From Bugula neritina (taxonomy: Eukaryota > Animalia > Bryozoa): 64,000 nt of DNA. The translations under genes and the position numbers were made by a program. Numbering within the stretch: position 1 is the first letter of the stretch; every line of letters starts with the position of its first letter. The stretch spans positions 8,673,150 through 8,737,149 of the forward strand of contig OZ037772.1 of assembly GCA_964035545.1 (NCBI GenBank), read 5' to 3'. Shown here in pieces: positions 24,980-63,270 of this stretch. The notes beneath the pieces were generated by a model, which was not told the DNA's origin, did not search any database, and saw nothing but the letters and a program-made list of their open reading frames with translations.

Positions 24980-25505
<526 letters not shown>

Positions 25506-36999: not shown

Positions 37000-39900
37000 T
37001 TAATGAGTTGAGGGTGGTTTTATTGAGCTCTTCACAGCTAACTTTCTTTTATTTCTCTTTTTATTATATAATATCTTCATCTGTTTCAAACGCTTTGACG
37101 TTTCGCTAACTCTCCGCTCTTGCAAACATGCTGTAACAATAGGATATTATATTTTTACGTAACAACCAACATGCAACCAAAAGATGCCGATTGTAATGTC
37201 GGTATATCTTATAAAAAAGATCGTTGAAAATAAAAATTTTTAATTATGAATAATATACATCACAACTTTTAAATTTATTATAATTATAGTAATTGTGAGC
37301 CTTTTACTCTGTTTAGTCAACCGTTGGGGAAAAGTCGCTAAATAATATAAACTTTCTCAACTTTTAGTTCTCATTTAATAATAATTCACTAAAAAGTCAA
37401 TTTAAACTATTTGCTTTAAATTTTAGTGTTTTGTAGTATATTTTATATATAATAAACTATATATCAAATCTTGCACTATATATACTATAGTATATTATAT
37501 TTTGTATATATTATAAACTTTATAGTGTAATTTTTATTATGCTAATTTTTTCTTACAATATAATTTATATTGAATTATATGTTATGTTTTAGTATATTAT
37601 ATATTATTACAAATTTTAGTATACCGTACCATAATATTATATACTAATTGCCTATTAAATTTGTTTGCATTTTGTAACAGACTATAGCATGCATTTACAT
37701 TATAAGTTATATAAAATATATATGGTATATATATATAATATAAATATAGAAATTAATATAATATAATTTATATATAATATATAACATATAATTACAATGT
37801 ATGCATATATATAATATAATACAGTATAGTAAAACTTATAATAATTGTTTTAAATTATGCATATTGTATATTATATGTTGTATTATACTATTGCATATAC
37901 TGTATTTATATTACAAATTATGTATTATTATATATAACTGTATGATGAACTTTGACTCACCTATAACTAGTAGTCTTAAGCAATGGACCATTATGAAAAT
38001 GTTTAGAAATACAGTCACAGTAAAGAAAATAAATGCCAACAGCTCGCTCAATTTGATTGATTCCTCAATAAATAGCTGAGCTAAAATGAAAAGAAAAAAA
38101 ATTTGAAATATAAAACTGCTATTCTTATATAAAATAATGAAGCAAAACATAAGGAGATATACAAAAAATGCTTAAATTTATTGATTAATGTTTTATTAAT
38201 AATTCTCTATAAAACAATATTCAATACTTTTAATTAGAATCTTGAAACTCTAATTTATAATTTGGTTTGAAGATACTTTTATCTAAAAATTAAATTATAG
38301 ACAAATCAATTTTTACAATGCTATTAAATGCCCCAATATGCAATACAAAATAGAAAAATAAAGTTATTTTTCTTGTTTGCTTTTGCATTTAGTTATACTT
38401 TGGCTTGATTTATATCAATTGTTTAGGTTCTTAACATGGAAAAGTTTGGTTTGTGACTATAATTTTATTCTAAACGTATATTTAATATAATTTTGTATGA
38501 ACCTTACTTTTGTTGGATATAGTCAATTCATAGGCAGTCGTATCTCCTAAGACGTACACCGTTACGTTATGCATGCCTTCTCTCTTAACAAAATTCTTCG
38601 GGGAAGTAATTTTACAAATGTCAACTGTCCCATTTATCTCCGTGCTCTTATTGTATTGCGGGATGCAAATAGAAGAAATAAATAAATTTTTTAGGTCGAC
38701 CAATCGAATAGTTTTACTTCCATAGTCAGCCAATAAAAATGTTTCGTCGTCTAAAAAGAGTATATTTGAAAGTTTTTGAACACTGGCAGTTTCGAGCAAG
38801 CCATCGCTATGGAAACCTTTAGCATAAACAATATCTTGTATAGCTGGGCTATGAAAAGTTGATTTTATTCTTGATATGGAGCTCTCTGTTTGCAAGTAGA
38901 GATAATTCCCAGATATGTCAAACGTAATTGCCTCAATCATTTTATCCCAATACAAGATGGTTTTGACACGATTTGTATCTAAGCACAGGCAGCGCAAAGT
39001 TTGCGACCCGCTGTCATAAATTAGTACTTCGCTCAAATTTCTCGGATTCAGAATTAAACCAATAGGAAAGAAAAACAGAGCCCTGGAGAAACTTCCGTCT
39101 CTTCTGCCATATTTAAAGCAAGTGCCAGCAATTGTTGAAGTAACTAAGTTTATCCGATTCAGCTTTCTTATGCAGCTGTAGGACTGATCTGAAATCCATA
39201 AAGTTTCATTGTATTTCGGGAGAGTTAAAAGACCAGATATGAGGCCGAATCTTGCATCAGTAGATGACCCATCAATATATCCATCTTCGGAGGAAATTCC
39301 CGCCAAATGGTGGAAAACTGTAAAATTGTTTGTGGTGTAAATAGCGTACCCAATCACAACTAGGAAGTTGTTTGCAATGTACTTATCGTCAGAAGCGTAA
39401 GTGAATGGCAAGGTTGATTGAAGGTTATGAATTTTTGTTACTTGTGTGAAATTCCATCTACAAGTAATATATTACACTGCATGTATATAAAATATGTTAT
39501 CTTTGATATATTATGGGCCTGACTTGGGTCAAACTTTTTGATTGAAATAAAATTAATGTTACATTTAGAATCATTTAGAAACTTAAGTATTGCTTATATG
39601 TAATAGTGCCAGTAAATTAGGTTGTTGATGCATATATGTACTAGTGAAAATTAAAATTAATAAAAAGCAAATATAATATGGGGCAGACAAAACTGATGCT
39701 GTATAGTTCAACCAACATCAGTGTTCTCTACTTCGTATAATATTTGCTTTTTATTAATATTCTCATATCACTGTCGAGTTATAAATAGACAAACAGTTTT
39801 TGCTTGTAAAAAAAGACAACCTAATTATTGTTGAAGCGAATACAGCAATTGACTTAGCAAAATACCAAACTTAAAACAAATAACTGCATTGATATTACTA

Positions 39901-40965
39901 ATTAATATAATAAGCTATTTAAAATTGAAAAATACCTATTTAATTAAATTTACTAGCATAATCGACACTGCAGGTCAAAACTGGCCGCAATCATTCACAC
40001 TGACAAGGTAGAGAGGCTAAAAACTCAGGCTACACAAATTTTTTTATATAAAAAGTCACAAAAGCAGCTCATAAGCAATAAAAGCACTTTGGCTTAATAA
40101 AATAGTACGTTCAATAACTATTCGCAACAATTATAAACATTTAATAATTTAGCAAAAACTTTAACAATAAAATTATATGATTGCTTAGTGTTTTAAAACA
40201 TAGGCAATTTTTGATAATAATTTAATCGAGGTTAGAGACAAATCAAATAAGTGGTTTACCTTCTTAGTTTGAATATATGATTCACTTAACAGAAAGATTT
40301 TCGAAGTATTCCCATTAGCAGCACCTACATACAGTATAAAATAGATAATCTGCTAGAAACATAAACTAATATAAACTTATTACTAACAGCAAAGTGTATA
40401 TAAATATTTGAAGTCATTTTTTTAAATATTTCAATGCATCTGCATACTTTAAAATTTATTTTAGAAAACAAAATTTTGAAGAACCTAAAATAGATTGTAA
40501 CGCAAACACTGATAATCAAGTTGAATATTATAATATAATATATTATATATTTTGACGAAAGCACTTATTTAGCTGTTTTAACTTTACACATGTTTCAATC
40601 TTTTTAATGGTTAGTGCTTTATACATTTCGCACAGATGTGCAAAACCAAAGATGTAATAACTACTAATTAGAATTAAAAAAATAAGCAAAATTAATTTGC
40701 ATTAATATTGTACATTAAGTACATATAACTTAAAATATACACTACATTGTGCTATATAGCATTTAACTTAAATAAAATTGTGCAAATCAGATTCGTATGT
40801 GTAAGATTGATAGCAAATTATGACTATCCTAAAAAAATTGTTATTTTTTTATTTAGAACAAAAAAAGAAAACAACTTCGAGTTTAAAGATAAATTTTGCA
40901 AGTAACTATTATAGAGCTGTTAAGCTTACAAATAAGAACAATGGTGGATGTATTCCTCGTAGCAT
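37000..40965 (-). pseudogene. NHL-type beta-propeller membrane protein, paralog R1 (TM, no Thr stalk); in-frame TAA just after the signal peptide
   Basis: Exons (minus): 40965(ATG)-40930, 40324-40260, 39457-38508, 38080-37961 (TM LLAFIFFTVTVFLNIFIMV), 37130-37000 (basic tail, TAA). Translation starts MLRGIHPPLFLF|VLLMGILRKSFC*VNHIFKLR, stop at 40286-40288. The propeller exon is open (GYIDG..ARF, WISD..SCIR, TIAGTC). Confidence 0.65.
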
Positions 40966-41835
40966 TTGAATGAATAAATATAAGTGATGACAGAGCAACT
41001 TATTGTATCACACAAACTCAGTACTTTATGATTTATAACTTTTAAATGAATTTTGGTATGAAATATAGAAAATTATTTGAACAATTTTAAAGTTATTTTA
41101 ATAATTTGATAGGCAAATGCATATGTTTTACCTCTGCTTGTAAAAAATTATTTAATATAATACAATAAATTAATATATTATTATTGTTTATAAAACTTTC
41201 TACTTATTGTATATGCCGTATATATTAAAAAAAGTCAAGCAACATGACTAACATGCCATTGAAGTATTCAAAAATTAAAAATAAACATAAATTTTTTTTT
41301 AAATCATCATCAAAAATATAGTGATAAGTTTAATTTAATTATGCATGGGGCTTTGTTACTCTTATTTTATAAAATGTTATCTTTTATAGATTTATTTACA
41401 TTAATTAACATCACAACATTGTTTTTTGAGTCTGTAAACAGTCTTTAGCAATGCATTGGACCATTATATATAATTATTGTTTATATAAATCGCATTTGCA
41501 ATGTTTTAAAACCTGGAGTTTTTTAGTGCGCATATATTGTAGAAAAATCTTTCTATACACGAAAAAAACAAAGAGAAGAAATTTTTTTAGCAAAATGCTG
41601 GATTTCAAGTCCAGATTTGAAATACTGTTTTCAGCTTATTATAGCCATTTAATATTACTTCATAGGCTACAGACTAGCTTTAAAAATAATAATATGAAAC
41701 TTTGAAAACAAGAAACTAGAATTATCCAATCGAATTTTAGGTGAACAAAAGTTTAAAAGATTTTATTTATTCTAAGAATTCAGTAATTTATTTTAACTGC
41801 AATACTTAATTCCACAAAACTAAGACTCTTGAAAC

Positions 41836-44800
41836 ATGGAGTCCCTAGTTATCAGAATATTCAGGGTAGGTAAGAACAAATCTTTCAAAATCTTGGTTAC
41901 AACATTTATATATAAGTAACACTTTAATTTAGGCAGTAAATGTGAGAAATTGCATATACACTTCTTGAATAAGCTGTATAGCATGCATATAAAAGCTGAC
42001 TTAAAACATGTAGAAGTAAATAAAAAAAATATAAATATATTTAAAAAAATCTCACGGTTGTTTAAAGTTGTTGTATCTGTAAAGGTTCTATTATAAATGC
42101 AAGTAGTTTTAATTGCCTGTGCTTTTGAAATTATAAATGCCCTTTATTGGGTTGAAGATCATAATTTAATTATGATAATTATAGCTGGATGAGGCCATAA
42201 GCTACTGAAAAACAACTAATTTTTATAATACTTACCTATATATAGAAATAGCATATAATATTTTGTTTACATTTTTTTACAGAAATATATTTTCCTGATT
42301 ATTGTGATGACACCTCAATGTGATTCTGACTTTAGAGCTTCCTACACTGTGATACGCAAGTAAGGCAATGGAAAGTGATAGTTATGGTTAGCTCAAGCAA
42401 GCTATAACCAGGGTTGGGGCCAATTACAGATGAATGTAATTAATTACAATTACATTTACATGAGAATTTGTCAATTACAATTACAATTATAATTACAGTT
42501 GAAATAAATGTAATTAATTACAATTACAATTACATGGTAATGTAATTAATTACAATTACAATTAATTTTTTTCTTACAAAAGACAGATACAAATTATATA
42601 ACTAGACTTCTGTAGTCTAACTTCCAGAGGCAATTTTGACAATTGCAAGCTTTCTTTGTTCTCAACAGTAACAAATAGGGTGATCAATACAACAATAGAT
42701 TAATCTGAACTTTTTATTGGGTAGTAGGAAAAGCTGGAAAAAGATGAATTTTATAAGATTTAAAAATTTGAAGTAATTGTTATGTAATTATAAAGTTATT
42801 GCAAAATTCAATTACATTAGCAATGTAATTAATTACAACCAATTACAATTACAAATTACAATTACCCCAACCCTGGCTATAACTATCACCGTCATTGAAT
42901 ATTGTTCTTTTTATACTTTTTCTGGTAAATTTTAACAGAATAATTATCAAATATAACTATACAATTAAAAGAAACTCAAGTCACCCTCTGAAAATTTTTT
43001 CATAAGATTAGGTTATGTTTGAAATACTGCCGCAGTGTTAAATATTGTGATGTCATTAAAAGTATAAACTAACCATTATCTAACTCTTTTAATTAAAAAT
43101 TATTTTAGAATAAAGTTTGGATTATCTTAAAATAGTTTTTTGATACTAAACATATTTCATCATGCTCTCCAACAAATATATTTTGGTTTGGGCATTACAC
43201 AAATGCAAATAAAAGAAAAAATATCAAAAACTGTTTTTAAAACTTGAGAATAGTAATTTTTTTAAACTAATCTCAATTTATTCTTTCTTGATCAATTATA
43301 TTTGTTTAATTTCTTTTCTTTACAGCACTAAGTTTCATCCACTAGAAAAATTTGCTGACTTCAAAGAATTCCTTGAACGTTATAACAGACCAATTTACTT
43401 CTTCACTAAAGATGACTACATAAAAAATGAATTCATCGTCGCAGCTGGGTTTGGAGTTTTTACCTCGAGGAAAGTCGTAACGCTTGCCCGTCTGGCTGGT
43501 AACTTTGTGGAGAGTGGTAATAGAAATGGAGAAAGGAACTATGCAAGATTTCGCAAAATAAATGGAATAATAACCAATCCGTATGATAAATCAAAGATAT
43601 GGGTTATGGACTCGTATAACTACTGCATTAGAGAAATAAACCGCAGAACTGAAGTGACTTCTACACTCACAGGACAGTGCGGAATTACTGGTCATCAAGA
43701 CGGTGAAATAAAAGACGTAATACTAACAGAGCCGGTGGCTTTAACCGTGAGGCCAAATCAAGCGGAAAATGTTGAAACATATTTTTACGATAACGGAAAT
43801 TTTCGCCTGAAAACCTTAAAAAAGACAGGAGTGCTATTGCGAGTTCACACGGTCATTACTTGGAACAGAAAAATTAACAGCCTGTGTTTTGACCCGTCAG
43901 GAGACGCGCTATACTTAGTGTATAATACGGGCATAGGAAAACTGGTGCTTTCAGGAGTTGCCCAACCTGCTTTAACAATTTCTTTTGAAACTAAGTACGG
44001 GTTTTCAGATGGGCTTCTAAATAAGGATGCTAAAGTCAAGAGGCTAACAAGCATGGCTTTTACTATAAACGGTTTTATTATATTAACGGATGAAGGCAAT
44101 AGTGTGATTCGTGTGCTGGACTCAAAACGATGGGCGTTATCTTCTATCTGCACGACAGGAAGACAGGGTGATGATGTAGCTGGATTACCAACCGTCTGCA
44201 GATTGAAGTATCCAAAAAACTTATTATCAATTGGAAATGGAAAGATACTCATACTGGGTAGAAGCGCCATTTTTGCTTTGCGACTTACGGGTAAGTTATA
44301 TTGTTGAAATATCTTCACATTTTTAATGCAATTTTTAACAGAATAACGTTTTTTGTTTACAACAGCTTGAAGCAATTTTTAAACAGTTCTAAAATGAATT
44401 TTTGTTTTCAAAATTAACACAATGTATTGGCAAACATTCTAATTATACCTACATTAAAATTTTCTAATCAGCTAAAAATGTATCGAGGTTTCAAAGATTG
44501 TGTTTATGCAATACTAATGTTTTTAACTTTCCAAAGTTAGTATGCAGTTCTAAAGCTTGTAGTCTACACTCTAAATTGGATTTATACTGTCTGTAATTAG
44601 TGTAGTGTTGCCCATTATGCTATTAAAAAAGCAATCATTATTTTAAATTTGTATATGTGTGGCAAAAAAGCTTTTATACACCACTTTTTGCAGGCTGCTT
44701 ATAATTAAAACTACATAAAGTTTTATACCATAAAACATTATTAATTTTTTTGGCTATGTTGTAAAAAAATTAAAAAGTAAACCATTACATTAGTGAATAA

Positions 44801-44956
44801 TTAATAAAAAAAATTTAATTTTCCCATAGCAAAACACATTTTGAGACAAATTACGATTTTTTTCATTTTCTGATACAAATTTTTTAGTATAGCTATTTTA
44901 TCTATTGCTGTACTTTCAACAGAAGCAGCTATATAGGTGCTTTTGTTCACAGGGAC

Positions 44957-45049
<93 letters not shown>

Positions 45050-45589
45050 GATTTTATGTTTAATAATTTATCAAACATAAAACTATTAAACATAAAATTA
45101 ACTATATAACCATTCCTGTAAGAATCCTTATTAGAAAAAGCTTTATTGTGGATTTTTGGGTAAGAACTTATTCAGATAGAGCACAGGAGCAATTATGATT
45201 AGATGTTCTTCTTAATATCACCATTGGCCTTTTGTTAGGGTTCAAACTTATTTATAACTTCATGCTTACTATATATAAGGTAAACGTATTCACCATAATA
45301 TTCACATACTGTGGGGTGTTTCTAATAAAATAGTGTATTCCACAGCATTATTTAGTTTTTCATGCTGCTTATAATTTTAGACGAGAAAAAGACTGCAATT
45401 ACTACTACGGCCAGCACAAGTTTTATTCCAGTGACCACAACCATGACTAAACTAACAACAAGGAATTCTACCCAATCAAATACTACTACTACTTACAGTG
45501 CTCTAATATCTACATCTGTTGCACAAAGAATTACAAACTATCTTCTTTTTGTTTTGATTAAAATAAGCTTGTTGCAATTGTTAATTTAA
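41836..45589 (+). CDS. NHL-type beta-propeller surface protein, paralog R2 (Thr-rich stalk, GPI-like hydrophobic C-terminus; ~426 aa)
   Basis: Exons 41836-41865 (MESLVIRIFR), 42283-42359 (KYIFLIIVMTPQCDS), 43326-44290 (propeller), 45381-45589 (TTT stalk, then NYLLFVLIKISLLQLLI*). Total 1281 nt, in frame. Confidence 0.8.
42409..42875. mobile_element. hAT MITE with AATTAC subterminal repeats, in R2 intron 2
   Basis: TIRs cagggttgggg ... ccccaaccctg; perfect 8-bp TSD gctataac (42401-42408 / 42876-42883). Confidence 0.9.
44960..45046. repeat. (TA)n microsatellite
   Basis: Directly visible. Confidence 0.95.
45110..45270 (-). mobile_element. tRNA-derived SINE (family 1), diverged
   Basis: gcacaggagcaattatgattagatgttcttcttaatatcaccattggcc..gggttcaaac. 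Confidence 0.6.
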
Positions 45590-45722
45590 TTTAAATCAAT
45601 TATTAATTTAATTTAAATCAATTACTAATTTAATTTAAATCAACCGCAAATTTAATTTAAATCAATTACTAATTTAATTTTAATCCATTACTAATTCAAT
45701 TTAAATCAATTACTAATTTAAC
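45582..45722. repeat. 22-bp minisatellite (taatttaatttaaatcaattac)n overlapping the R2 stop codon
   Basis: Directly visible, ~6 units. Confidence 0.85.
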
Positions 45723-45899
45723 TTATAGATGTAGCATTTGTTTTAATGCTATAATAATTTGAGAAGTAATAAAACCCTTTCTAAATAAAACAAAAGCCTT
45801 TATTTATTCTTGCAGAAACAAATCTATTATAATTTCTTATAAGTTCTGAATACTTTTTGAGTTTAACTGCATGTAGAAGATATCTAACATTCTATACAA

Positions 45900-46263: not shown

Positions 46264-49200
46264 ATGGAACTTTTTAACCTTAAGCTATTTTTGGTAAGTG
46301 AATGAATGTAATTGATGTATGAAATTGAAATACATAATGTTAAATAAATTATCAAATTATTAACAATAAATTATTTGCATGCTGTAATTGCTGTTGACTT
46401 GAATGTTTTATAAAATAATGACATATGTAAAATGAAACATGCTAATTTTTTATTATTTATAAAATATGCTTGTTTTAAACATTATATATTTTGTGAGAAT
46501 TATAATATAGCTAATGACTTGCTCTCACCGTGACAGCAGCGTAATATGTATAATCACTGACAGAGAGTTGAACTACAAATCTTGTAGTGAATCCTAGGCC
46601 ATTGTTTTTCACGCAACTATTTTTGAATCAAAACACAGCTAATCCTCATTTGTCTTCCTATAAAACAATTAGATCATCTTTGTTAAATTAGTACACACTC
46701 GGAATCTCCAGTTTTTAGCTATTTTGTTCACAAGTTAGCTGCTATAAGCTAGTGCATATATTATTTTTGCTCTAAACTAATAAAGTATCAATAAAAGTAG
46801 TTCTAAATTATTAAGATTGTTTTTAATTTTGCTTGATTTCTTATTATGTTTTTTCCTAATATTAGTTTTCGAGCTGGTCTGTAAATCCAAACTAACTCCC
46901 AGTTACCTAATTGCCTATAAATGTAGAATATATATTGTGATTTGTATTTAATACAGAAATGTATTTTACAGGTCATGATAATGATATCTCCATCCAATAA
47001 CTTAAAAATCTATCACACAATTCTACGAGAGTAAGAACTAAAATGAAATTTTAGCATAATCACATAAATTTTATCATCATATTTTTATTTTTTATGCAAA
47101 AATTTACGGAAGTTTATAATTGCCATCCTTATGATGGAAAATTCAATTTTGAGTACATTGCTCTAACTTAAATAGTATCATATTTATAATATTCAACAGT
47201 ATAAAATTAGGTTTTTCACTGGTTGAGTTGAAACTTTCAGAGTTCTTTTGAAAAAAATTGCTGAAACTTATCCTAAAAAACTCACTCATTCTGTTGAACT
47301 GCATGCTTACAATAAGCCTTCTAAACCAATTTATATAAAAGTTGCTAATAAAGAAAATGAAATAAAACTTGAGCTATAAAAATATGCCCTACATGTTGTG
47401 AAACGCAATTAGGCGAACTTTATGCAAATTACAAATTGTAAGTGTATTTTACTTAGGAACAGTAATCGAAAAAATTGAGAGGGCCCAAGTTCTTTATATT
47501 TTATTACTAAATTTTGGTTTGAGGCGCCGTTTGAACTTTGTGCGAGAACATAACTTCTTTTGCCACATTTATAATCTATAGAATATACTGCTTTTTTTAA
47601 ATTTCTCCATTACTGCATCTACCTTGTGGATTTAAACGGTATTTTGCTTCTTGTTTCAGCACCAAGTTTCATGACGTGAAAAAAGTTGCAGACCTCAAAA
47701 CTTTTGAAGATTTGTACAAAACCCCAGTTTACTTTTCAATCACAGATGATTACATAACAGGCCAGTTCTTAGCAGTAGCTGGATTTGCGGTCTTCACCAC
47801 CAAAGATTTTGTAGACTTTGAGTCTATAGCTGGGAGTTTGGTGGAAGATGGTAATGCAAACGGAGAGAAAGGTTATTCTAGATTTGGCAGAATAGATGGG
47901 ATATTGACCAACCCATATAATAGTTCAAAAGTATGGGTTGCAGACAGTTCTAATCACTGCATTAGAGAAATAGATCGTGAAACTAACATTACTTCTACGT
48001 TTGCAGGACAATGTGGAATTAATGGTCTTCGAGATGGAAAAATAATTAATGAAGCATTATTATTAGAACCTGTAGCGTTGACTGCCAGGCCAAACAAAAA
48101 CAATCAAGAGTTATATTTTTACGAAAATGGAAATACACGAGTAAAAACTATAAAAATGACAGGAAAAGAATTGCAAGTTCATACTGTAAATATTTGGGAC
48201 CGAAAAATCTATAAAATGTGTTTCCATCCATCAGGAGATGAGCTATATTTGGTGCTGGATCGGAGGGTATGGAAACTGACTATTTCAGGGGTTGTCTTGC
48301 CTGTAATAACAATTTTATTCGAAAATAGGTATGGGTTCTCAGATGGAGTTTTTGATCGTGATTCCAAGGTAACAAAACTGACAAGCATGGCGTTTACAAT
48401 AAATAGCGAGCTTGCTTTATTGACGGATCTAGAGAATAATCTTATTCGATTACTTGACTTGAAGCGAAAGGAGTTGTCCTCCATTTGCAGAGGTAGTAGA
48501 TATGACCTAATTGATAAGGCTGGAACCGCAAGCTCCTGCATCTTGATAAACCCAAAACATTTATTTCCAGGGACAGATGGCAAAATCTTTATGATGGGCG
48601 AAAATTCTATTCTTTCGTTGCAGGTTACAGGTGAGATAACTTTTTTTAAATTTTGCAAAAAGTTTAGAATAGGTTTTAGCTGCGCTTGTATAAATTGATA
48701 AGAAAAGTTCTACCCTAAGTTTTTTATAAACGTTTATTTCATTAAAAAAAAATTATTTTTGATTTTTAGTAAAAGTTGTTAAACTGAAAACCATAAAAAA
48801 ATTAAAATTTTAAGCTATTTTATAATTGTAAATGTAAATTATATTTTTTCTGTTGATGTGGCTGTATGTTCAATGCAATCACAGCAATTCTAATATATTC
48901 AATATATTATCTTGACTGCCTTAAGACTTTATTTATGTAAAATAATTGCGCCCACTAAGATTCGAACCACAGACCACCGGCTTGCAAGCAAACACGCTAA
49001 CCAATTATGCTACAGGGGCTTCGGGATTCTAAGCAAAAATTTATATAAGAAATCAAACACGTATAAATTTTTTTTAAAGATAACGATGAGATGCTTATGG
49101 AGCCAAATCAGCCAAATTTTGTAAACATGTTTTTTGTAGTTGTTTAAATTTTTACTACTATTTTGACAATAAGCAGCGTTCATTGATAATAAGGTTTAAA

Positions 49201-49442
49201 CAGTGTTAAGGGTGTTTATGTTCACAGTGTTGGTAATATTTTTAGAAATACTAAAGTCCACTACACCCGGAGCAGATAACTCCAACTTTACAACAGAAAA
49301 CGTGAATGCCACAACAACAACACCAACAACCACAACAACAACAACAACAATTACAACACCTACTCGATCTGTTGCATCTACGATTGCAACATGTTTTTTT
49401 ATAACTTTGGCGAAAGAAAGTTTGTTTCACACGCTCTTTTAA
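46264..49442 (+). CDS. NHL-type beta-propeller surface protein, paralog R3 (Thr-rich stalk, GPI-like end; ~418 aa)
   Basis: Exons 46264-46293 (MELFNLKLFL), 46972-47030 (an in-frame alternative acceptor exists at 46957), 47660-48630, 49246-49442. Closest relative of R2 (TKFH.., ILTNPY..SKVWV.DS.N.CIREI.R.T). Confidence 0.8.
48947..49019 (-). pseudogene. tRNA-like element, family 2
   Basis: Reverse complement gcccctgtagcataattggttagcgtgtttgcttgcaagccggtggtctgtggttcgaatcttagtgggcgca. Confidence 0.55.
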
Positions 49443-50007: not shown

Positions 50008-53000
50008 ATGATGCCTTTAACAAACCATTTTATTTCTATTTATTTGGTGAGTATTAACTCGTGAAGCAATAATCAAAAAGTACATTAATATGAAGTTGAA
50101 AATTCTACTCTTAGATATACAGTATGTTTGTTGATATAGACTTAACATAAAGCTTATATATTATAAACACATAACTGACTATAATATACTGATTTAAGAA
50201 CATTGTTTTGCACAATCTATGCTGAAAAGTATATACAGTATAAAATATTTTTATGCACTAGCTTTATTACAAAATGTTTACTACTATAATATATTATATT
50301 ATAAACAAATATCAATTTAAAATATAATATCTTATTTTGAATTTAAAAAAATTACGGCTATGTTATACTAAACAGATTTTACGAGTCAAGTATGATTACT
50401 TGCAATAAAATTTAGGTTTTTTTTACAAAATAAATAAAATAATTTAGTGTGTATTTTTAAATTTTAGCTGAATTAAAATAAAATTAATTGTTTTTCTCAA
50501 TTGTAGCATAAAAATGCTTTATTGAAAATATTTACACAATCATGTTGCATCATGACATGTTTTACGTTTACAAATAATTCTGTCGGATCAAATCTTTTTT
50601 GATATCTGTAGCTGACTCTTCACACTATTGAAGAGTTGTAATCAGCAATTAATAATTGTTGCTTATAAAATTAATAAACTGCAGCCAGTGAAGACATAAT
50701 GTTGTGTGTAAATATAAAATTACTGTTGCAACCAACAACTAACATAACATGAATGGTCACATCCAGTAAAATTCAGTTATAAGCGTTAACTTTTTTGTTT
50801 ATAAAATGCCTTATGGCTTTAGATAAGTTTTTTAATATGAGTACCCAATTTAGTGCTACACCGTTAATAAGCTAATATTGGAATAGTTTTTGTATATATT
50901 TCATTATATACTAATTAATATTATATATATACATTTATTTTACATGCAGGTTGTCGCGTGGAGCAACACATGTGCAGCTGTGGGTTACGTTTCTTACATT
51001 AATAAAGTACAAAGGTAAACTTCTAGTACATTCTATAGAACTTTTAAAATAAACATTTTTTTCTTTTCATAACTTCCTTGAAATTTGTACATAATTAATT
51101 ACTTATTTACGTTGTTGTACTTAATTTTTAGTTGCATAATAAAAATGTCCTAAACTTATTAAAAAAAACTCTAAATCGGTCAATATCAAACTTTTTTAGC
51201 ACTACCTGGTTTAACATTAGTAACTTTTGGTATTCTGATTTTCCATAGTGTGGTGGTGCACCTTAGCTGGTTTTCAACTTAGAAGACTGTTGTTTTGATT
51301 TATGATGAGTGGAGGGGCGGGCAGTAGCCTATTTGTTAAATAATTTCAATTTTTGAAAGATGATATATCACGATTTTTAAAAGCCTCTATCATTAAAATT
51401 TAGTCTCTTGAAAATATTATATTTGTCTTTAGTCCTTAAAAATGATGCGTAATAGTTTTATATTTGCATGGAGATAAAAGCTTGTATAATGCAATTGCAG
51501 CAGATTTATTTTTCGTTATTAAGTTCATTATTTTAAAAACTGCTTTATCTAAACTCATAAAATGATGCTGCAAAGATGAATTTATAAAATTTTACCTCTT
51601 TTGCAATGTTTAAATTGTAGTTTTGAATTTAACGGTGTCTCAGTGTTTACTAAAACCGATTTACTACAAGATAACGGGTTACTCCGCTACGTAACCAAAG
51701 ATGAGTTTGTTGAAGGAAACTTTCTAGCTGTTGTTGGCTTTGCCATTCTAACAACCAAAAACTTCACAATGTTTCACCTAATAGCGGGGCAATTTGAAGA
51801 GAGCGGTTATCAAGATGGTGTAAGATCAGACGCGAGGTTTGGCAGTATAACAGGGATAGTAAGCTCACCAGATGGCGCTAGTAAATTGTGGGTGGCGGAC
51901 TTCTCAAACAGCTGCATTCGGCTAGTAGACATGGTGCATTATGACGTGTCAACGTTTGCGGGTTACTGCACACATCAAGGTAACAGAGATGGACATGTAA
52001 GGGTGGCGCTGCTGTTGCTTCCTATTAGTATCATCCAATGGCCTAGAAACTCCACTACAGTCTTCTTTTATGATAACGGTTCGGAAAATCTTCGATTTTT
52101 TCAGAAGTATGGAGGACTATGGAGGGTGTTTACTAGAGCTCGGTGGAACAGAAAAATACAAAGCATGACCTTTGACACAGTGGGAGACTACTTGTATCTC
52201 ATATCTGACAAAGGGATAGGAAAATTGTCCTTTTTGTCAAATGCTAAAATCATTGAAGAAATTTTCTTAGCAACATCAGGAATTAGCGATGGGAGAATAG
52301 ACGTAAATGGAAGTAATGTGGCAGAAGTTAAACAGATGCAAGATGTAATCCCATTAGACGATGATCTACTTTTGATAGCAGATTACGGGAATAGTAATTT
52401 ACGATTATTTGACTTGAAAAATTCTCTAACCACAACGATTTGCCTTTCACAAGTTGACGCTGTCAGGCAGGTGACTCAAGATGTTAGCTCATGTAAAATT
52501 AACAAGCCAACAAAATTTCTCCAAAAAAGAAATGATAGCTCCAAAATTTACATATTAGGAAAAGAAGCTATTTATAACTTATTGTTTGTTGGTGAGTAGA
52601 TTTACTTTTCAGTATCTGTAACCTTACATAGTTGTACTTGACTTGTTGCCAAATGTCAACAGGTATTCTCAAACATTGACAAGCATTGTTAAGTACTGTT
52701 AAGTTGCCATTTGAATTGAAGCATAGAGCACTCATATTATAAAACTGTATATACATTTTGCTTATAATTATATTTGAATAACATAATTGTTTACTGAAAT
52801 TTATAAATGTTACATCGTTAGTGTACATATTTTTTTTCTTTATTTATTTATCGTTTTATATATTTATTTATTCAAATATTGACACAGAAACAGATAGTGT
52901 TTCAACAACAACAACAACAATGACTACTACAATACCTAAACTAACAAGTGCTGCTAACAGCTCAACTCTAGTAACAAGTACTTCAACCTCTTTTCCAATG

Positions 53001-54073
53001 AGCACTATACCTCCAAACACCAAAGAGTGGTTGAACTGGAAGTATATCCTACCAGGGTTTGGGGTGATGATCTTGGTCATGTTTCTACCAATTATAATTC
53101 TTCTCAATAGAGGTGAGTTACCATTCTACACATTGAGTTATGGAATCTAACCTAGCCTGCAGCTATTTGATAAAAAACTCACATGAGTTTACAATCTTTA
53201 TCTTTGTAAAACCACATATATGGTTTTTTAAACTGGCTACAGATTTGGCATCTATATTGTGGCCAATAACAAGTTATGAATAATTCATTTGAGATTGCAG
53301 CCGTGGTTTAGGAGGTTAGAGCGTTTGCCTAGCAAACACTAGGCCATGGGTTCGAATCTCGACAAAAGCCATTAGTGATGTTAGAAAGAGCATCCAGTCA
53401 TACTTGCTTTTGCTTGTGGTCCATCTGAATAAATCTTTAGCCCAACTTAACAAATAAAAAAACGGTCAATCAGGAGTTTTTTATAGGAGCGGTGACTATA
53501 AATTTATTTCCGTACACTTCTTAACATAACCATTGACCTGTACTGAAATTCAAACTACTGACAGAACGTTTGCAAAGCAGTGCTATGACCCTATACCACA
53601 GTTACTTTATTGCTATAACAGCTGAATATGATATGAAATGCAAATAACTATAAATAAATCATGATAGTATATAATATTCATTGCATAATATATACTGCTA
53701 AGGTTTTACTGTGCTAGTTAAACTTACAGCCAATATTGACTTATGTGCTATATAGCTGCTGAAGTACCTCTATTAAATAGATTTTGTTTAATGAAATATG
53801 CCATTTGTTCTCAGCTAGCAAATGACAATCAATATATTCTTTTAACTACACATCATTTCATCAAGAATGTCTTATAATTTTAATAACTATTAATTGATAT
53901 CTAATTGTGAGAGATTCATAATATTTTAATAAAATCAGTAACTACTATACGTTATACTGTCTGCATTACGTTAGTTACTACTTATAGTCAGTATAGATAC
54001 TGATTCGAAATTTCCCATTTTAGCAAAGAATATTGCACTCCTGATGAGAAAAAGATCAGTCCGTAGAAGATAA
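50008..54073 (+). CDS. NHL-type beta-propeller type-I membrane protein, paralog R4 (~449 aa)
   Basis: Exons 50008-50046 (MMPLTNHFISIYL), 50950-51014, 51621-52591, 52888-53112 (stalk + TM ILPGFGVMILVMFLPIIILL), 54024-54073 (AKNIALLMRKRSVRRR*). Total 1350 nt, in frame. Confidence 0.8.
53297..53500 (+). mobile_element. tRNA-derived SINE (family 1)
   Basis: gcagccgtggtttaggaggttagagcg (A box), gggttcgaatctc (B box), gatgttagaaagagcatccagtcat body. Confidence 0.75.
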
Positions 54074-55164: not shown

Positions 55165-58779
<3,615 letters not shown>

Positions 58780-59406: not shown

Positions 59407-62400
59407 ATGCAGCTAATTCTTCCAATCATCAATTTGGTGAGTCACAATTATTAGTAAAATAATTAGACTAAATTATCAAAAAAATTATATACTTATACTA
59501 TCACCTATTGTGACACTATTGATATTTGACTATTAACCTTTTAATAAAAATAACTGAGTAAAAAATGAAGAGCAAAATATTTTATTACTTTTCAGTGTCA
59601 AATGCTTTTATGCATATGAACCTATATATGAAAAATAATTAAGATGCTCTAATGTTTAAAGTTTTACAATTCTTGACCATTGACTTTGAAACACAGAATG
59701 TCAACATAACAATGTTATAAAAAACTAAAACAATTATTATTTAACAAATATTTTATAGCTGCTCTTGTGTGCCCTCTAACTGTATATTTTTTTGCAAATA
59801 AATATAGTCAGAGAAATTTATTTCAAACAGCCAATAATGTAGTTTAAACAATTTTAAGATGACATAATCATCAAATAAAAGCAAAATAATCTTGCGAATT
59901 TCTTTTTATAGCTAGACTTTGTTATGTAAAAATTATATGTCATAAATTACAACTATATATTACTTTTGGATTTCATTATTTTACAACTTTTCTCTGAAGA
60001 TCCTAAATAAGCCAAGATTAAGTTTGTCTCAAAACTCAACAGACAAGCAAATGCACAAACAAGCTGATTGTAACACAAACAAGAAGTTAATGATTGCATT
60101 CACTAAAACATAATTGAAACTCTCCTGCATGGCATCTGAATTCAAGACCTCTGGCATGAAAGCAGACAACATTTCACCATTTGCCCCAAAGAGACTATTG
60201 CGTGCAATCAATGCATATATACACAAATTTTTGTTAACATAAAAAATTTTACTGACTTTTAGGTTTTACTGCTGGTGAGATGTGCTAGTGCAGCAAGGAT
60301 TTTTAGAGATACTGCATACAGGTACTAAGTTATTATTGTCTGTAATGCTGTCCAAGATAAATGATTTAAAACTCAATAGCGAAATTTAATCTATGCCATG
60401 AATTTATATTACTATTAACATACTATTAAACAAAAGTACATAAAATAAAAATCTATATATGCTGTTATATATACTCAATAGCTATAGACTGCACAAGTTA
60501 TTAAAGCAACTTCATGTATCAGCTAACCTTTGTGCAAGCAATCCAAAAATTTAGGTTGTGAATTATTCTTGAACTGTTAGCATCAGCTTCCGTATAAAAA
60601 TTTCAATTCTTTAAAATGTTAAAAACATAGACCAGTTCTTTGTCTAAAAGCTACAGTTTCACTTTGGAAGTATTTTTATTTATGCAGGTACAAATTTGAG
60701 GACGTGTCTGTAGTAACTAAGACTACTAGCATAGTCAAAAGATTTGGTCCAATCAGCTTGCTCTTTACGGATGATTGGCTGGAAAGAAGTTTCTTTGCAG
60801 TTATTGGATTTTCCATCTACTCAACCAATGATTTCAAGAAGTTTCATTTAATAACCGGACATCCACTAGAAAGTGGCTACAAAGATGGTCACTATACCGT
60901 AGCTAGGCTGGGAAAAATTACAGGAGCCATAACTTCACCCATAAACGAGACGCATATTTGGATAGCGGATGAAACTAATCACTGCATACGAAACGTTGAC
61001 CGAATAACTCATATTATCACCACGTTTGCCGGCACATGTGAAGTGTCCGGCAATGACGATACATTTGCATCTTATGCATTGCTTACCAGTCCCATGGGTC
61101 TCGCAACTAGAAGGGAACAAACGAAGAATGTCTATTTCCACGACACGGGAGCAAACACAATTAGATATTTAAAGCCGACTCGAAAACTATGGGCCGTGGC
61201 TACGCTACATCAATGGTCTAGAAGAGCTCAAAGTTTACACGTAGATCTCTCAGGAAGTTTCCTGTATATCGTGATGCCTTCTTCGGTAGCGAGAATATCA
61301 ATTAAAGTTTCACCGATATTGGAGTATGTCTTCTTAGTAGCACGTGGGGCTTCAGACGGGCGACTGCAAGATGAGGCAAACGTTCGACAGCTCAGGGATT
61401 TGGTGTTTTTAGAAGACAATCTGTTTGTGGTAACAGATACGGAGAGTAGCAATCTGCGTTTAGTTGATCTGAAGTCTAGAACCATGTCCACCATATGCTG
61501 GTCCCAGGTACAGAGACATATCGAGAAGAACGGGAAAATTAGTAGCTGCAGAGTGATTACACCGACATATCTCTCTATCGGATTAAATAAGCTTGACATA
61601 TACATAGTGGGTCCTCGGTCTATTTACAAACTTAAAATAAAAGGTAAGCCTGTGGTCTGTAAGTCTGGTAAGTAGGTTTTTATGTCTGTGATTTTGGTTT
61701 GGAAATAGTAATACAATTTGGTTACCCAATCAACTTGGCTCAACATTTGAAACATTTATATAGTGTATACTTTTCTCATAACATTCACGTCCAGTTAAAA
61801 GTATAATATTTATTAGAGTATATTATAGTAATGGTCGTTCAATCTTTGCTGTAAAAGCATGACCTTTTATATTAATTTTATTTAGATTTAGATGCCACTA
61901 CTACCACTCGTATGTCACCCACTACGCCAATAACCACTAAAAGAACAACACCAACCACCACATCTACAACTACAACAACACAAAAGACTACAACAACAAA
62001 AACTACCAAAAAGACCACTCCTCTAACTCAAGAATATACGTCCTCATGGCAATATGTGGTGATATCTCTAGCTGTCTTTATTTTCTCATTCTCAATAGTA
62101 GGAATAATGCTTGTATGCATGTCAAGTAAGTAAATCATTCTCCAGAATAATATATATAATTGTAGTGATGAATTTACTCAATAGTCTCTGTGGTGTAATG
62201 GTAGCACACTTGCTTGCAAGCCAGAGGACTCGGGTTCGATTCCCAGTGGTGGCAACTAATTTACAAGCTATTTCGGCCTTTAGTAAAGTTTAGTTGTAGT
62301 ACTCCGAGGGAGTTGAGTGGCCAGGGAAGCCTGATGACTGAAGAAGTAGTAGAGAGGCCAGTGGAGTTGAGAGAACTGGGTAGGATGTAGCAATGAGTTT

Positions 62401-63270
62401 ACCCAGTGGTCCCGTCGTATAATGGTTAGCACACTTGCTGGCAAGCCAGAGGTCTCGGGTTCGAATCCCAGTGGGGGCAACTATTTTACAACAATGATTA
62501 CCTGACTCTACAGTCTACACCTTTTACTGCAACAACCAAAAAGTTTTATTAAATGCTAGATTAATTTTGTTTATATTTTTAAAAAGATTTCCCATAGCAA
62601 TGCTAAGTTCACTTTACAACTGTTTTGCTTAAACAAGTTGACAAAAACATTCATACAGTACTTTTCTTGAAGTAAAATTCTTGCTAATATTTTTAAATCA
62701 TTTGTGAAAATCATCAAATTGCAAGTATATTGCAGGAAAACATTAAATAATTGGTATATGCCTTTTTACTTGGTCAGAAATTTAATCTCTCAAAGTCAGT
62801 CAGTAGTAGTTTCTTAATATAGGAATATAGTGACACACTAATTACAAAACTTGGGGAGGGTTACAAATCCTTCCATTCTTTGCTGTAAAAAGTCATGCAA
62901 GTTATATATGTAGTCACTACCCCTGTGAGAAAACCCATGATGGAAGAGGTTGTTTTATAACAATAACGAAGCTCGCTGTTAATGCCTATAATGATTGACA
63001 TAGATATGGCGACTAGACACAACAGTTTAATTGTTCTAGTATGCTGATAGCGGAGTTGTAAATGTTTTAGTGAACAAATCTATGAAGTTGGAACAAATGA
63101 GAAAAGCTGAAGAAATATCAAAGCAACATAAGAAAAAAAGAAAAAAGAGGAAACCAACAGCGTCTCTAGTTGGGTCAGATAGTGAGTCCCTGTATGGGAA
63201 CCCCGTGGAAAAGCCTAGAACCAAGACTAGGAAACATACAAAACCTAAGCTAAAAAGTTCGCATAAGTGA
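59407..63270 (+). CDS. NHL-type beta-propeller type-I membrane protein, paralog R6, with a long basic cytoplasmic tail (~494 aa)
   Basis: Exons 59407-59436 (MQLILPIINL), 60263-60321 (VLLLVRCASA), 60688-61643, 61886-62125 (stalk + TM YVVISLAVFIFSFSIVGIMLVCM), 63071-63270 (tail MNKSMKLEQMRK..KKKRKKRK..SLYGNP). The tail start resembles the R1 tail SKRLKQMK. Confidence 0.78.
62184..62254 (+). pseudogene. tRNA-like (Ala/Cys-related) SINE head or tRNA pseudogene, family 2
   Basis: tggtgtaatggtagc (A box), gcttgcaagc anticodon-like arm, gggttcgattccc (B box / T arm); imperfect acceptor stem. Confidence 0.6.
62408..62479 (+). pseudogene. Second tandem tRNA-like element, family 2
   Basis: cgtataatggttagcacacttgctggcaagccagaggtctcgggttcgaatccc; shares ~20 bp of 5' flank with the 62184 copy. 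Confidence 0.6.

What the first reader, a model, noticed from the sequence alone, without database searches (positions are those of the whole stretch)
37000..63270. Array of six diverged single-exon beta-propeller surface receptors with mixed GPI and TM anchors
Seen: six paralogs share one exon plan (30-39-nt ATG exon; 59-77-nt signal exon; 950-980-nt propeller exon; stalk/anchor exon; optional tail exon; intron phases 0,2,1,1). Conserved scaffold motifs (AG....GY.DG....ARF, WVAD..N.CIR.I, TFAG.C...G..DG, IRL.DL......IC...C) surround highly variable sequence. R2 and R3 end in a hydrophobic tail without a cytoplasmic part (GPI-like); R4-R6 have TM plus short or long basic tails; R1 has no stalk. 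Established: these motifs are typical of NHL-repeat propellers (NHLRC2, teneurin and bacterial NHL types). Inference: a lineage-specific family of variable propellers raised on mucin stalks fits pattern-recognition, allorecognition or adhesion receptors, possibly with decoy (GPI) and signalling (TM) members.
Basis: partly seen in the sequence, partly recalled or inferred. Interest (0 to 1): 0.82.

Follow-up and report, generated by a model that had tools for sequence, protein, structure and literature searches.

The report
Bryozoan membrane-anchored NHL-propeller gene array
Six neighbouring genes of a Bugula-type moss animal each encode a six-bladed NHL propeller that is probably held on the cell surface by a sugar-coated stalk plus a membrane helix or lipid anchor. 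They are an outlying part of an undescribed family of at least 65 genes whose members are old and conserved, so they look like fixed-specificity binding receptors rather than a self/non-self locus.

Summary
Six intact paralogs lie at 37000-63270, one on the minus strand and five on the plus strand.

The large exon folds with high confidence (pLDDT 91.8) as a six-bladed NHL propeller. The nearest solved relatives are SOQ1 and NHLRC2.

- **Anchors:** R2 and R3 end in a hydrophobic tail right after a Thr-rich stalk (GPI-like). R4-R6 have a stalk, a transmembrane helix and, in R4 and R6, a short basic tail. R1 has a helix and a basic tail but no stalk.
- **Exon support:** No RNA evidence could be obtained. 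Collinear contigs from a second Bugula lineage keep every covered splice site, reading frame and stop, and the exons are more conserved than the introns.
- **Family size:** At least 65 full-length copies exist, 58 of them in a cluster 0.7-1.1 Mb away on the same contig. Outside Bugula-labelled samples I found only bacterial NHL proteins.
- **Selection:** Five of the six genes have one-to-one orthologs. dN/dS is 0.17-0.23 in the three pairs measured, at dS about 0.35.

A surface binding-receptor family is supported; allorecognition is not. The scan has already reported this family's main cluster (s1-445834) and reached the same reading.

The parts
40930..40965 (-). R1 exon 1 (ATG, 36 nt, phase 0 donor GTAAGC)
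   Evidence: Predicted from sequence only. Joined in frame with exon 2 it gives a hydrophobic, signal-like N-terminus.
39844..39914 (-). R1 exon 2 (71 nt, hydrophobic, ends in phase 2; weak donor GTATTC)
   Evidence: prediction only.
38508..39457 (-). R1 propeller exon (950 nt)
   Evidence: Open frame. Acceptor at the homologous position and phase-1 donor GTAAGG. Aligned with the family.
37961..38080 (-). R1 anchor exon (120 nt): transmembrane helix, no Thr-rich stalk
   Evidence: best 19-residue hydrophobicity window 2.65, S/T/P fraction 0.12.
37000..37118 (-). R1 tail exon with stop (39 aa, 14 K+R)
   Evidence: prediction only. Its end equals the finding's start.
41836..41865 (+). R2 exon 1 (ATG, 30 nt)
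   Evidence: Resembles R3 exon 1 in length, in starting with Met-Glu and in position.
42283..42359 (+). R2 exon 2 (77 nt, hydrophobic)
   Evidence: Conserved island between R2 and R3. In the ortholog contig L035 the acceptor and donor are kept and the only indel is an in-frame 3-nt deletion.
43326..44290 (+). R2 propeller exon (965 nt)
   Evidence: Ortholog P0057 is 83.5% identical, dN/dS 0.23.
45381..45589 (+). R2 last exon: Thr-rich stalk, then a hydrophobic C-terminus ending at the stop (GPI-like)
   Evidence: The hydrophobic window is the last 19 residues. Only 675 nt separate the stop from R3 exon 1, which leaves no room for a tail exon.
46264..46293 (+). R3 exon 1 (ATG, 30 nt, GTAAGT)
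46957..47030 (+). R3 exon 2 (74 nt, hydrophobic)
   Evidence: Homologous to R2 exon 2.
47660..48630 (+). R3 propeller exon (971 nt)
   Evidence: Ortholog P0181 is 79% identical.
49246..49442 (+). R3 last exon: Thr-rich stalk plus a weakly hydrophobic C-terminus (GPI-like, weaker than R2)
   Evidence: S/T/P fraction 0.47, best 19-residue hydrophobicity window only 1.37. 566 nt separate it from R4 exon 1.
50008..50046 (+). R4 exon 1 (ATG, 39 or 36 nt, GTGAGT)
   Evidence: prediction only, with no ortholog coverage.
50950..51014 (+). R4 exon 2 (65 nt)
   Evidence: prediction only.
51621..52591 (+). R4 propeller exon (971 nt); the one folded
   Evidence: Against ortholog contig L031 it is 88.1% identical with no gaps, and both splice sites are kept.
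52888..53112 (+). R4 stalk and transmembrane exon (225 nt)
   Evidence: In L031 the splice sites are kept and the only indels are two in-frame 6-nt ones.
54024..54073 (+). R4 tail exon with stop (16 aa, 7 K+R)
   Evidence: 96% identical in L031, against 79% for the flanking intron; acceptor and stop are kept.
55165..55197 (+). R5 exon 1 (ATG, 33 nt, GTGAGT)
   Evidence: ATG, frame and donor are kept in JGI contig L034.
56172..56236 (+). R5 exon 2 (65 nt, hydrophobic)
   Evidence: 90.8% identical and gap-free in L034, against 73-76% for the gapped introns; splice sites are kept.
56681..57660 (+). R5 propeller exon (980 nt)
   Evidence: Ortholog P0047 is 88.3% identical, dN/dS 0.17.
57897..58118 (+). 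R5 stalk and transmembrane exon (222 nt); the tail exon is not resolved
   Evidence: best 19-residue hydrophobicity window 2.88. The tail candidates are ambiguous.
59407..59436 (+). R6 exon 1 (ATG, 30 nt, GTGAGT)
   Evidence: ATG, frame and donor are kept in L040.
60263..60321 (+). R6 exon 2 (59 nt, hydrophobic)
   Evidence: 91.5% identical and gap-free in L040, against 80-84% for the introns.
60688..61643 (+). R6 propeller exon (956 nt)
   Evidence: Its Pfam NHL hit of 21.8 bits is above the cut-off. Ortholog P0050 is 90% identical. 88.8% identical to L040 with no gaps.
61886..62125 (+). R6 stalk and transmembrane exon (240 nt, 50% S/T/P)
   Evidence: 89.6% identical and gap-free in L040, against 78-79% for the introns; splice sites are kept.
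63179..63270 (+). R6 tail exon with stop (30 aa, 9 K+R)
   Evidence: prediction only. Its end equals the finding's end.

Best explanation
**What it is.** The six genes encode single-pass or lipid-anchored cell-surface proteins whose only globular part is a six-bladed NHL beta-propeller.

**Proposed mechanism**
1. Two short 5' exons together make a cleavable signal peptide.
2. The propeller exon carries two conserved cysteine pairs and, in five of the six genes, N-glycosylation sites. It folds in the ER.
3. A Thr/Ser/Pro-rich, presumably O-glycosylated stalk of about 35-60 residues holds the propeller above the membrane.
4. The anchor is a transmembrane helix with a short, strongly basic tail in R1 and R4-R6, or probably GPI in the sister pair R2/R3.
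5. Each paralog presents its own propeller surface, fixed long ago and now under purifying selection. The array, and the family of at least 65 genes it belongs to, would then be a germline repertoire of fixed-specificity binding proteins.

The likely roles are recognition of microbial or environmental ligands, or cell-cell and cell-substrate adhesion. The tails have no enzymatic or adaptor domain, so any signal would need partner proteins.

**Shown:** the six genes, the NHL fold, the exon plan with its conserved splice sites, the anchor types at sequence level, the family size, one-to-one orthology and purifying selection.

**Inferred:** secretion, glycosylation, GPI attachment, surface location, ligand binding and biological role.
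For: - **Genes and shared plan:**
- **Fold:** the AlphaFold model has pLDDT 91.8 and pTM 0.90, with 24 strands arranged as 6 blades of 4.
  - Foldseek best matches are the SOQ1 and NHLRC2 NHL domains, TM 0.72-0.75.
  - The family profile hits the same two proteins at E 3e-20.
  - ESM Atlas NHL clusters match at TM 0.8.
- **Extracellular signature:**
  - four invariant cysteines;
  - 1-6 N-x-S/T sites in five of the six propellers;
  - stalks with 32-50% S/T/P, and transmembrane windows scoring 2.65-2.88;
  - basic tails.
- **Exons are real:** in contigs of a second lineage every covered splice site, frame and stop is kept.
  - Exons are gap-free or carry only in-frame indels, at 83-96% identity.
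  - Introns are gapped, at 73-84% identity.
- **Genes are functional and old:**
  - dN/dS 0.17-0.23;
  - about 78% of the positions that vary most between paralogs are identical between orthologs;
  - in the tree, each of R2, R4 and R5 pairs with its ortholog at 100/100 support, on short branches.
- **Family:** 65 full-length matches at E<=1e-50, of which 62 have no internal stop. Thr-rich stalk, transmembrane helix and basic tail recur in 6 of 22 main-cluster copies within the 1.5 kb of flank available.
Against: - There is no RNA or protein evidence for expression or for any splice junction.
- Signal peptide and GPI attachment are judged by eye and by hydrophobicity only.
  - The R2 and R3 signal-like N-termini contain charged residues.
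  - The R3 C-terminal tail is only weakly hydrophobic (1.37).
- Exons 1 and 2 of R1 and R4, and exon 1 of R2 and R3, have no ortholog coverage. The R5 tail exon is unresolved.
- No ligand, tissue or partner is known.
- A catalytic role cannot be excluded from sequence alone.
Confidence: 0.62

Rival explanations
1. Allorecognition (colony fusion/rejection) determinants. On this reading the propellers are highly polymorphic self-labels that bind homophilically, as Alr1/Alr2 do in Hydractinia.
For: - The animal is colonial.
- The genes form a tandem array of surface proteins with diverse ectodomains on stalks.
- The B. neritina draft-genome paper expects allorecognition genes but names none (PMC7576161).
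- Public Bugula contigs differ from the window by 10-21% at protein level.
Against: - The divergence from public contigs is no higher in the exons than around them. Introns and flanks are 16-27% different and dS is 0.34-0.40, so it looks like lineage divergence.
- dN/dS is 0.17-0.23 overall and at most 0.38 in any loop class.
- Orthology is one-to-one, with long paralog branches.
- Of 22 main-cluster copies compared with retrieved public proteins, the best match was 71-90% identical for 11 and lower or absent for the rest. None was above 95%.
- Within-population polymorphism could not be measured.
Confidence: 0.07
2. Membrane-tethered ecto-enzymes. Other six-bladed NHL/SGL-type propellers are enzymes, for example peptidyl-hydroxyglycine lyase, lactonases and streptogramin lyase.
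For: - The fold is shared with enzymatic propellers. Virginiamycin B lyase appears among the Foldseek hits.
- SGL/gluconolactonase Pfam families co-occur in the nearest Atlas clusters.
- Purifying selection on each paralog is compatible with enzymes.
Against: - The invariant residues are the structural NHL consensus (G-x-DG, D-x-x-N-x-C-I-R, cysteine pairs) of blades 2, 3 and 5. There is no conserved His/Glu/Asn set repeated around the central channel.
- Paralogs are only 31-53% identical, with variation spread over loops on both faces. That is unusual for isoenzymes.
- No Pfam enzyme family is hit.
Confidence: 0.1
3. Paired activating/decoy receptor system. The GPI-linked R2/R3 would act as non-signalling decoys or co-receptors for the transmembrane members R4-R6, which would signal through their tails.
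For: - Both anchor types occur within one five-gene clade.
- The GPI-like pair is monophyletic, so the anchor may have switched in a single step.
- The R4 tail is 96% conserved, against 79% for its flanking intron.
Against: - R2 and R3 are only 32-37% identical to R4-R6 in the propeller, so shared ligands are unlikely.
- The tails are 16-39 residues long and basic, with no ITAM/ITIM or domain.
- GPI attachment itself is unproven.
Confidence: 0.1
4. The propeller open frames are non-functional relics, or are parts of other gene models, and the small flanking exons are chance matches.
For: - No RNA evidence exists.
- The only public annotation of a family member (KAF6033544.1, a hypothetical protein) is a truncated, propeller-only model.
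- Small AT-rich exons are easy to over-predict. An automated scan for exon 2 in 22 paralogs was uninformative.
Against: - dN/dS is well below 1.
- 62 of 65 copies are intact.
- Splice sites and frames are conserved, and the small exons are more conserved than their introns in R4, R5 and R6.
Confidence: 0.03

Closest known systems
NHLRC2 (human) and SOQ1 (plant) NHL domains
   Same: These are the nearest solved structures by sequence profile (E 3e-20) and by fold (TM 0.72-0.75). They share the six-bladed NHL propeller and the same G-x-DG ... D-x-x-N-x-x-I-R repeat logic.
   Different: NHLRC2 and SOQ1 are single-copy proteins with a thioredoxin-like domain fused to the propeller, and they are not displayed at the cell surface. 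Here the propeller stands alone behind a signal peptide, on a mucin-like stalk with a transmembrane or GPI anchor, in at least 65 copies.
Teneurin NHL domain (and teneurin-like proteins)
   Same: It is an extracellular NHL propeller on a membrane protein used for recognition and adhesion. There are weak TEN_NHL Pfam and PDB profile hits.
   Different: Teneurins are giant type II proteins with EGF repeats, a YD shell and a toxin-like domain, in one or a few copies. None of those parts is present here, and the orientation is type I or GPI.
Bacterial cell-surface Ig/TIG-NHL proteins
   Same: These are the best sequence hits outside Bugula (E 1e-13 to 1e-24) and the best Atlas structural matches (TM about 0.8).
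   Different: They are prokaryotic, with different accessory domains and no introns, stalk or anchor cassette. The matches cover only 10-45% of the query at sequence level.
Stalked variable-receptor families (lamprey VLR; Hydractinia Alr)
   Same: It works like them in layout: a repeat-built binding head on a Thr/Pro-rich stalk, with a GPI or transmembrane anchor, encoded in large gene clusters. This comparison is from my own knowledge and was not tested here.
   Different: The fold differs (LRR or Ig versus propeller). There is no somatic assembly, and no sign of the diversifying selection or polymorphism typical of those systems.
Other NHL-propeller expansions noted by this scan in the same genome (TRIM-NHL arrays; secreted hypervariable NHL propellers; main cluster of this same family, s1-445834)
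   Same: They share the scaffold and the genome. The main cluster on the same contig is the same family.
   Different: The TRIM-NHL and secreted families are reported as hypervariable on one face. I did not check that. The family here shows purifying selection in all structural classes.

Membership tests
NHL-repeat six-bladed beta-propeller superfamily (Pfam PF01436 and relatives) | Pfam NHL repeat model matched above its curated cut-off | tested here: inconclusive
   Only R6 passes (21.8 bits against a cut-off of 20). R3 and R4 score 15.6-17.8 bits, R2 hits TEN_NHL at 15.3 bits, and R1 and R5 hit nothing.
NHL-repeat six-bladed beta-propeller superfamily (Pfam PF01436 and relatives) | Profile-level homology to proteins with solved NHL domains | tested here: met
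   The 24-member family profile hits SOQ1 and NHLRC2 at E 3e-20 to 6e-19, and also hits a fly TRIM NHL domain (Thin) and a teneurin-like protein.
NHL-repeat six-bladed beta-propeller superfamily (Pfam PF01436 and relatives) | Six blades of four antiparallel strands with N/C-terminal closure | tested here: met
   The model has pLDDT 91.8 and 24 strands, and the N-terminal strand 3-11 completes the last blade. Foldseek probability is 1.0 to NHL domains. Atlas TM is 0.8.
NHLRC2/SOQ1 orthologs | Thioredoxin-like domain fused N-terminally to the NHL domain; conserved single-copy gene | tested here: not met
   No Trx family appears in Pfam. The exons upstream of the propeller are 30-39 and 59-77 nt, signal-like exons. 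There are at least 65 copies.
Teneurins | Type II membrane topology with EGF repeats, YD-repeat shell and Tox-GHH/ABD domains | tested here: not met
   The coding models are about 1.3 kb and contain only propeller, stalk and anchor. The only Pfam trace is a sub-threshold TEN_NHL hit.
Type I membrane glycoproteins with mucin-like stalk (R4-R6; R1 without stalk) | N-terminal signal peptide, extracellular domain, S/T/P-rich segment, one hydrophobic helix, then basic residues | tested here: met
   Met at sequence level only. Stalks are 32-50% S/T/P, 19-residue hydrophobic windows score 2.65-2.88, and tails carry 7-14 K+R. N-termini are signal-like. No SignalP, TMHMM or experiment was available.
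GPI-anchored proteins (R2, R3) | C-terminal hydrophobic segment ending the protein, preceded by small residues (the omega site), with no cytoplasmic residues | tested here: inconclusive
   Both end in a hydrophobic stretch at the stop, with Ser/Ala/Thr-rich sequence before it and no room for a further exon. The R3 tail is weak (1.37). No GPI predictor or PI-PLC test was available.
Invertebrate allorecognition determinants (Alr, FuHC/BHF-like in function) | Extreme allelic polymorphism or diversifying selection on the ectodomain | tested here: not met
   Between-lineage dN/dS is 0.17-0.23. Loop classes reach 0.26-0.38. Orthology is one-to-one.

The most novel reading that the evidence does not exclude
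Bugulid bryozoans may have made the NHL propeller their main diversified recognition scaffold, in the way jawless fish use LRRs and jawed vertebrates use Ig domains. This family would be the membrane-anchored arm: at least 65 germline-fixed specificities on stalks, with transmembrane and GPI versions. It would sit beside the intracellular TRIM-NHL repertoire and the secreted NHL repertoire that the scan noted elsewhere in the genome. A minor variant of this reading is that the propeller exon was originally acquired from bacteria, whose surface NHL proteins are its best non-Bugula matches, and was then placed between signal and stalk/anchor exons.
Probability: 0.25. Interest if true: 0.7.

Novelty: new variant of a known kind. 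Interest (0 to 1): 0.45.

Why it matters
Bryozoans are a phylum with almost no molecular immunology or cell-adhesion biology. A search for papers naming both bryozoans and the NHL repeat found none, and no search turned up a paper on this family. The only public annotation of a member is a truncated 'hypothetical protein'.

A large, intact, conserved family of stalked surface propellers gives concrete candidates for three kinds of role:
- innate recognition;
- interactions related to larval settlement;
- contact with the symbiont, since B. neritina carries the bryostatin-producing Endobugula.

The result also gives a clear negative. This array does not behave like a fast-evolving self/non-self locus, which narrows the search for bryozoan allorecognition genes. 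The R2/R3 versus R4-R6 contrast is a natural pair for asking what the choice of anchor does to an otherwise similar ectodomain.

Tried and rejected
- **RNA evidence.** No places were named as human-like.
- **Whole main cluster.** I asked for the main cluster (C8 7.58-7.98 Mb) to classify the anchors of all copies.
- **Control gene for lineage divergence.** Two metagenome scans, one with a neighbouring FN3-like frame and one with the ankyrin exon, found nothing. Species-level divergence versus locus-specific divergence therefore rests on introns and dS within the family only.
- **Automated exon-2 scan.** A scan for exon 2 in 22 main-cluster loci, with an antisense control, was too strict to be informative. 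It would also have missed half of the window's own exons. It is not used as evidence.
- **One variable face.** I looked for variability concentrated on one propeller face. Mean column entropy is 1.86 bits in strands, 2.24 in D-A/B-C loops and 2.17 in A-B/C-D loops, and dN/dS is 0.14, 0.26 and 0.38. There is no face-specific hypervariability.
- **Non-Bugula animal relatives.** Three word-index searches and one exhaustive profile search found none. The top 150 hits of the exhaustive search were dominated by giant proteins with many NHL repeats; those I looked up came from metagenome or sequencing-run assemblies, and the two that carry a name have bacterial-style names. More distant animal relatives may therefore be hidden below rank 150.
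- **Spliced models.** Joined spliced models were not searched or folded. Exons were handled one by one by reference. Reading frames across junctions were only checked inside scripts, without printing or saving joined proteins.

Full report
**1. Observation**

The region holds six long open frames of 309-375 aa: R1 on the minus strand and R2-R6 on the plus strand. The DNA has about 30% G+C, where frames of this length do not arise by chance.

The six align end to end at 31-53% identity. R2 and R3 are closest at 53%.

Exon structure of all six genes:
- The propeller exon starts at a homologous acceptor that leaves one base to complete a codon, so the intron is in phase 2.
- It ends at a homologous phase-1 donor, GTAAG or GTGAG, just after the last strand.
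- Its lengths are 950, 965, 971, 971, 980 and 956 nt.
- Upstream, each gene has an ATG exon of 30-39 nt with a phase-0 donor and a hydrophobic exon of 59-77 nt.

Downstream exons:

| Gene | Anchor exon | After the anchor |
|---|---|---|
| R2, R3 | Thr-rich segment, then a hydrophobic C-terminus that runs into the stop | Only 566-675 nt to the next gene's first exon, so no room for a tail exon |
| R4, R5, R6 | Thr/Ser/Pro-rich segment (32-50%), then a strong transmembrane helix and a phase-1 donor | R4 and R6 continue into basic tail exons of 16 and 30 aa; the R5 tail is unresolved |
| R1 | Helix without a stalk | A 39-aa tail with 14 Lys/Arg |

My outermost coding bases, 37000 and 63270, coincide with the finding's bounds.

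**2. Are the small exons real?**

No RNA data could be reached.

Comparative evidence stands in for RNA. Public contigs from Bugula neritina-labelled samples (Logan assemblies of SRR4020080-84 and JGI sample 3300002729) are collinear with R2, R4, R5 and R6, including their introns.

| Gene (contig, call) | Exon or intron | Identity | Gaps and sites |
|---|---|---|---|
| R4 (L031) | propeller exon | 88% | no gaps |
| R4 | stalk/TM exon | 83% | two in-frame 6-nt indels only |
| R4 | tail exon | 96% | acceptor and stop kept |
| R4 | introns | 77-82% | many indels |
| R5 (L034) | exon 1 | 85% | ATG, frame and donor kept |
| R5 | exon 2 | 91% | gap-free |
| R5 | introns | 73-76% | gapped |
| R6 (L040) | exon 1 | 83% | ATG, frame and donor kept |
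| R6 | exon 2 | 91.5% | gap-free |
| R6 | stalk/TM exon | 89.6% | gap-free |
| R6 | introns | 78-84% | gapped |

For R4, all five splice sites and the stop codon are kept. For R2, exon 2 keeps both splice sites and differs by a single in-frame 3-nt deletion.

Exons 1 and 2 of R1 and R4, exon 1 of R2 and R3, and the tails of R1 and R6 remain predictions.

Spliced, joined models were not searched or folded. Frames across junctions were only checked inside scripts.

**3. What the domain is**

Pfam alone is weak. Only R6 passes the NHL cut-off.

A 24-member family alignment (A2) gave an AlphaFold model of the R4 exon with pLDDT 91.8 and pTM 0.90. It has 24 strands arranged as six four-stranded blades, and the N-terminal strand closes the last blade.

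- Foldseek places it with the NHL domains of SOQ1 (7djj) and NHLRC2 (6g7w) at TM 0.72-0.75. After these come TRIM-NHL, a teneurin-like protein and bacterial NHL proteins.
- The family profile hits SOQ1 and NHLRC2 at E 3e-20.
- ESM Atlas neighbours are bacterial NHL clusters at TM about 0.8. The language-model search gives NHL families only.

**4. Family and range**

In the window's own genome the profile finds 119 matches (121 with a single sequence).

- 65 are full-length at E<=1e-50, and 62 of these have no internal stop.
- 58 lie at C8:7.58-8.03 Mb, which is 0.7-1.1 Mb from this window on the same contig. Six are this array and one is on C3.
- Weaker, partial matches on C2, C7 and other contigs probably belong to other NHL families that the scan has noted in this genome. 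I did not test this.

A Thr-rich stalk, a transmembrane helix and a short basic tail are visible in 6 of 22 main-cluster copies within the 1.5 kb of flank available. I could not fetch more sequence.

Every full-length public relative whose source I checked comes from Bugula-labelled data. One of them falls in the same 90%-identity cluster as GenBank KAF6033544.1, a truncated 'hypothetical protein' of B. neritina. The next-best hits are bacterial surface NHL proteins covering a fraction of the query.

A search for papers naming both bryozoans and the NHL repeat returned none, and the other literature searches found no paper on this family. The draft-genome paper only says that allorecognition genes are expected (PMC7576161).

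**5. Evolution**

Five of the six genes have a one-to-one partner in the second lineage:

| Window gene | Ortholog | Amino-acid identity |
|---|---|---|
| R2 | P0057 | 83.5% |
| R3 | P0181 | 79% |
| R4 | P0001 | about 83% |
| R5 | P0047 | 88% |
| R6 | P0050 | 90% |

R1 has no partner among the retrieved proteins.

- For R2, R4 and R5, dN/dS is 0.23, 0.23 and 0.17 at dS 0.34-0.40.
- Pooled by structural class, dN/dS is 0.14 in strands, 0.26 in D-A/B-C loops and 0.38 in A-B/C-D loops.
- Columns that vary most between paralogs still show only about 0.25 non-synonymous differences per codon between orthologs. About three quarters of the paralog-specific residues are therefore kept.
- Paralog variability is spread over both faces rather than concentrated on one.
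- In a maximum-likelihood tree, R2-R6 and their orthologs form one clade (98/96). R2 and R3 are sisters (100/100), and each ortholog pair is joined at 100/100 by short branches, against paralog branches of 0.8-1.4. R1 falls outside, among main-cluster lineages.

The array is therefore old and stable. The GPI-like anchor type is confined to the R2/R3 sister pair, so it may have arisen in one step.

Main-cluster copies also differ from their best public match by 10-29%, and none is near-identical. The assembly therefore appears to be a different lineage from GenBank B. neritina. I could not obtain a control gene outside the family to prove this.

**6. Interpretation**

The best-supported reading is a family of cell-surface binding proteins. 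An NHL propeller is displayed on an O-glycosylated stalk and anchored either by a helix with a short basic tail or by GPI. Each paralog keeps its own old, conserved surface.

This fits a germline repertoire of fixed specificities, used for microbial or environmental recognition or for adhesion. It does not fit an allorecognition locus.

- An ecto-enzyme role is less likely, because the invariant residues are the structural NHL consensus rather than a channel-lining catalytic set.
- The decoy-versus-signalling idea is open but weak. The GPI pair and the transmembrane members share only 32-37% identity, and the tails lack known signalling motifs.
- The strong conservation of the R4 tail (96%) does suggest that the tail has a function.

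**7. Relation to earlier notes**

The scan already followed up the main cluster of this family (s1-445834). That follow-up concluded, as I do from independent tests on this window, that the family is undescribed, Bugula-restricted, old and conserved. Other notes supplied the organism lead (s1-447057) and the context of further NHL expansions in the genome.

**8. Verdict**

This is a real, well-defined feature. The architecture is a new variant of the known NHL-propeller kind and is undescribed in the searchable literature. Its function and expression are unknown, and the most exciting reading, allorecognition, is disfavoured. Interest 0.45.

Noticed in passing
window 57661-57720, 44953-45045; loci L013, L018, L023, L025 (just downstream or upstream of the propeller exon): (TA)n microsatellites sit immediately after the propeller-exon donor in R5 and in several main-cluster paralogs. 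They make the open frames run on as Ile-Tyr repeats. This recurrent position within intron 3 across old paralogs is unexplained.
   Followed up: no
window 53300-53400 (R4 intron 4); 62184-62254 (R6 intron 4); 30778-30859; 26787-26985; 15437-15633: tRNA-like elements are present: an Rfam tRNA hit at 62184-62254 and a tRNA-Thr(AGT) call at 30786-30859. A repeat within R4 intron 4, as represented in contig L031, also matches three other window sites. This looks like a tRNA-derived SINE, and the R4 copy is shared with the second Bugula lineage.
   Followed up: partly
window 55290-55600 (R5 intron 1): A (CA)n microsatellite about 300 bp long lies between R5 exon 1 and exon 2. The alignment with the ortholog contig L034 has 634 gap columns across R5 intron 1.
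   Followed up: no
window 24830-25525: A long compound trinucleotide repeat reads as His/Tyr, Leu/Pro or Val runs, depending on frame and strand. It coincides with a strong negative GC skew at 24-26 kb.
   Followed up: no
window 18.3-35.5 kb: Two tandem copies of a gene with a 660-670 aa ankyrin-repeat exon and caspase-like downstream exons lie next to the array. The scan has already followed these up (s1-447057).
   Followed up: no
whole assembly versus public Bugula neritina data: Every family member compared differs from its best public 'B. neritina' counterpart by 10-29% in protein and about 20-27% in introns. The assembly therefore seems to be a different lineage, a cryptic species or sister species, from GenBank GCA_010799875 and SRP081292.
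   Followed up: partly
window 40966-41835: R1 and R2 are arranged head to head, with only about 870 nt between their predicted first exons. This may be a shared bidirectional promoter.
   Followed up: no
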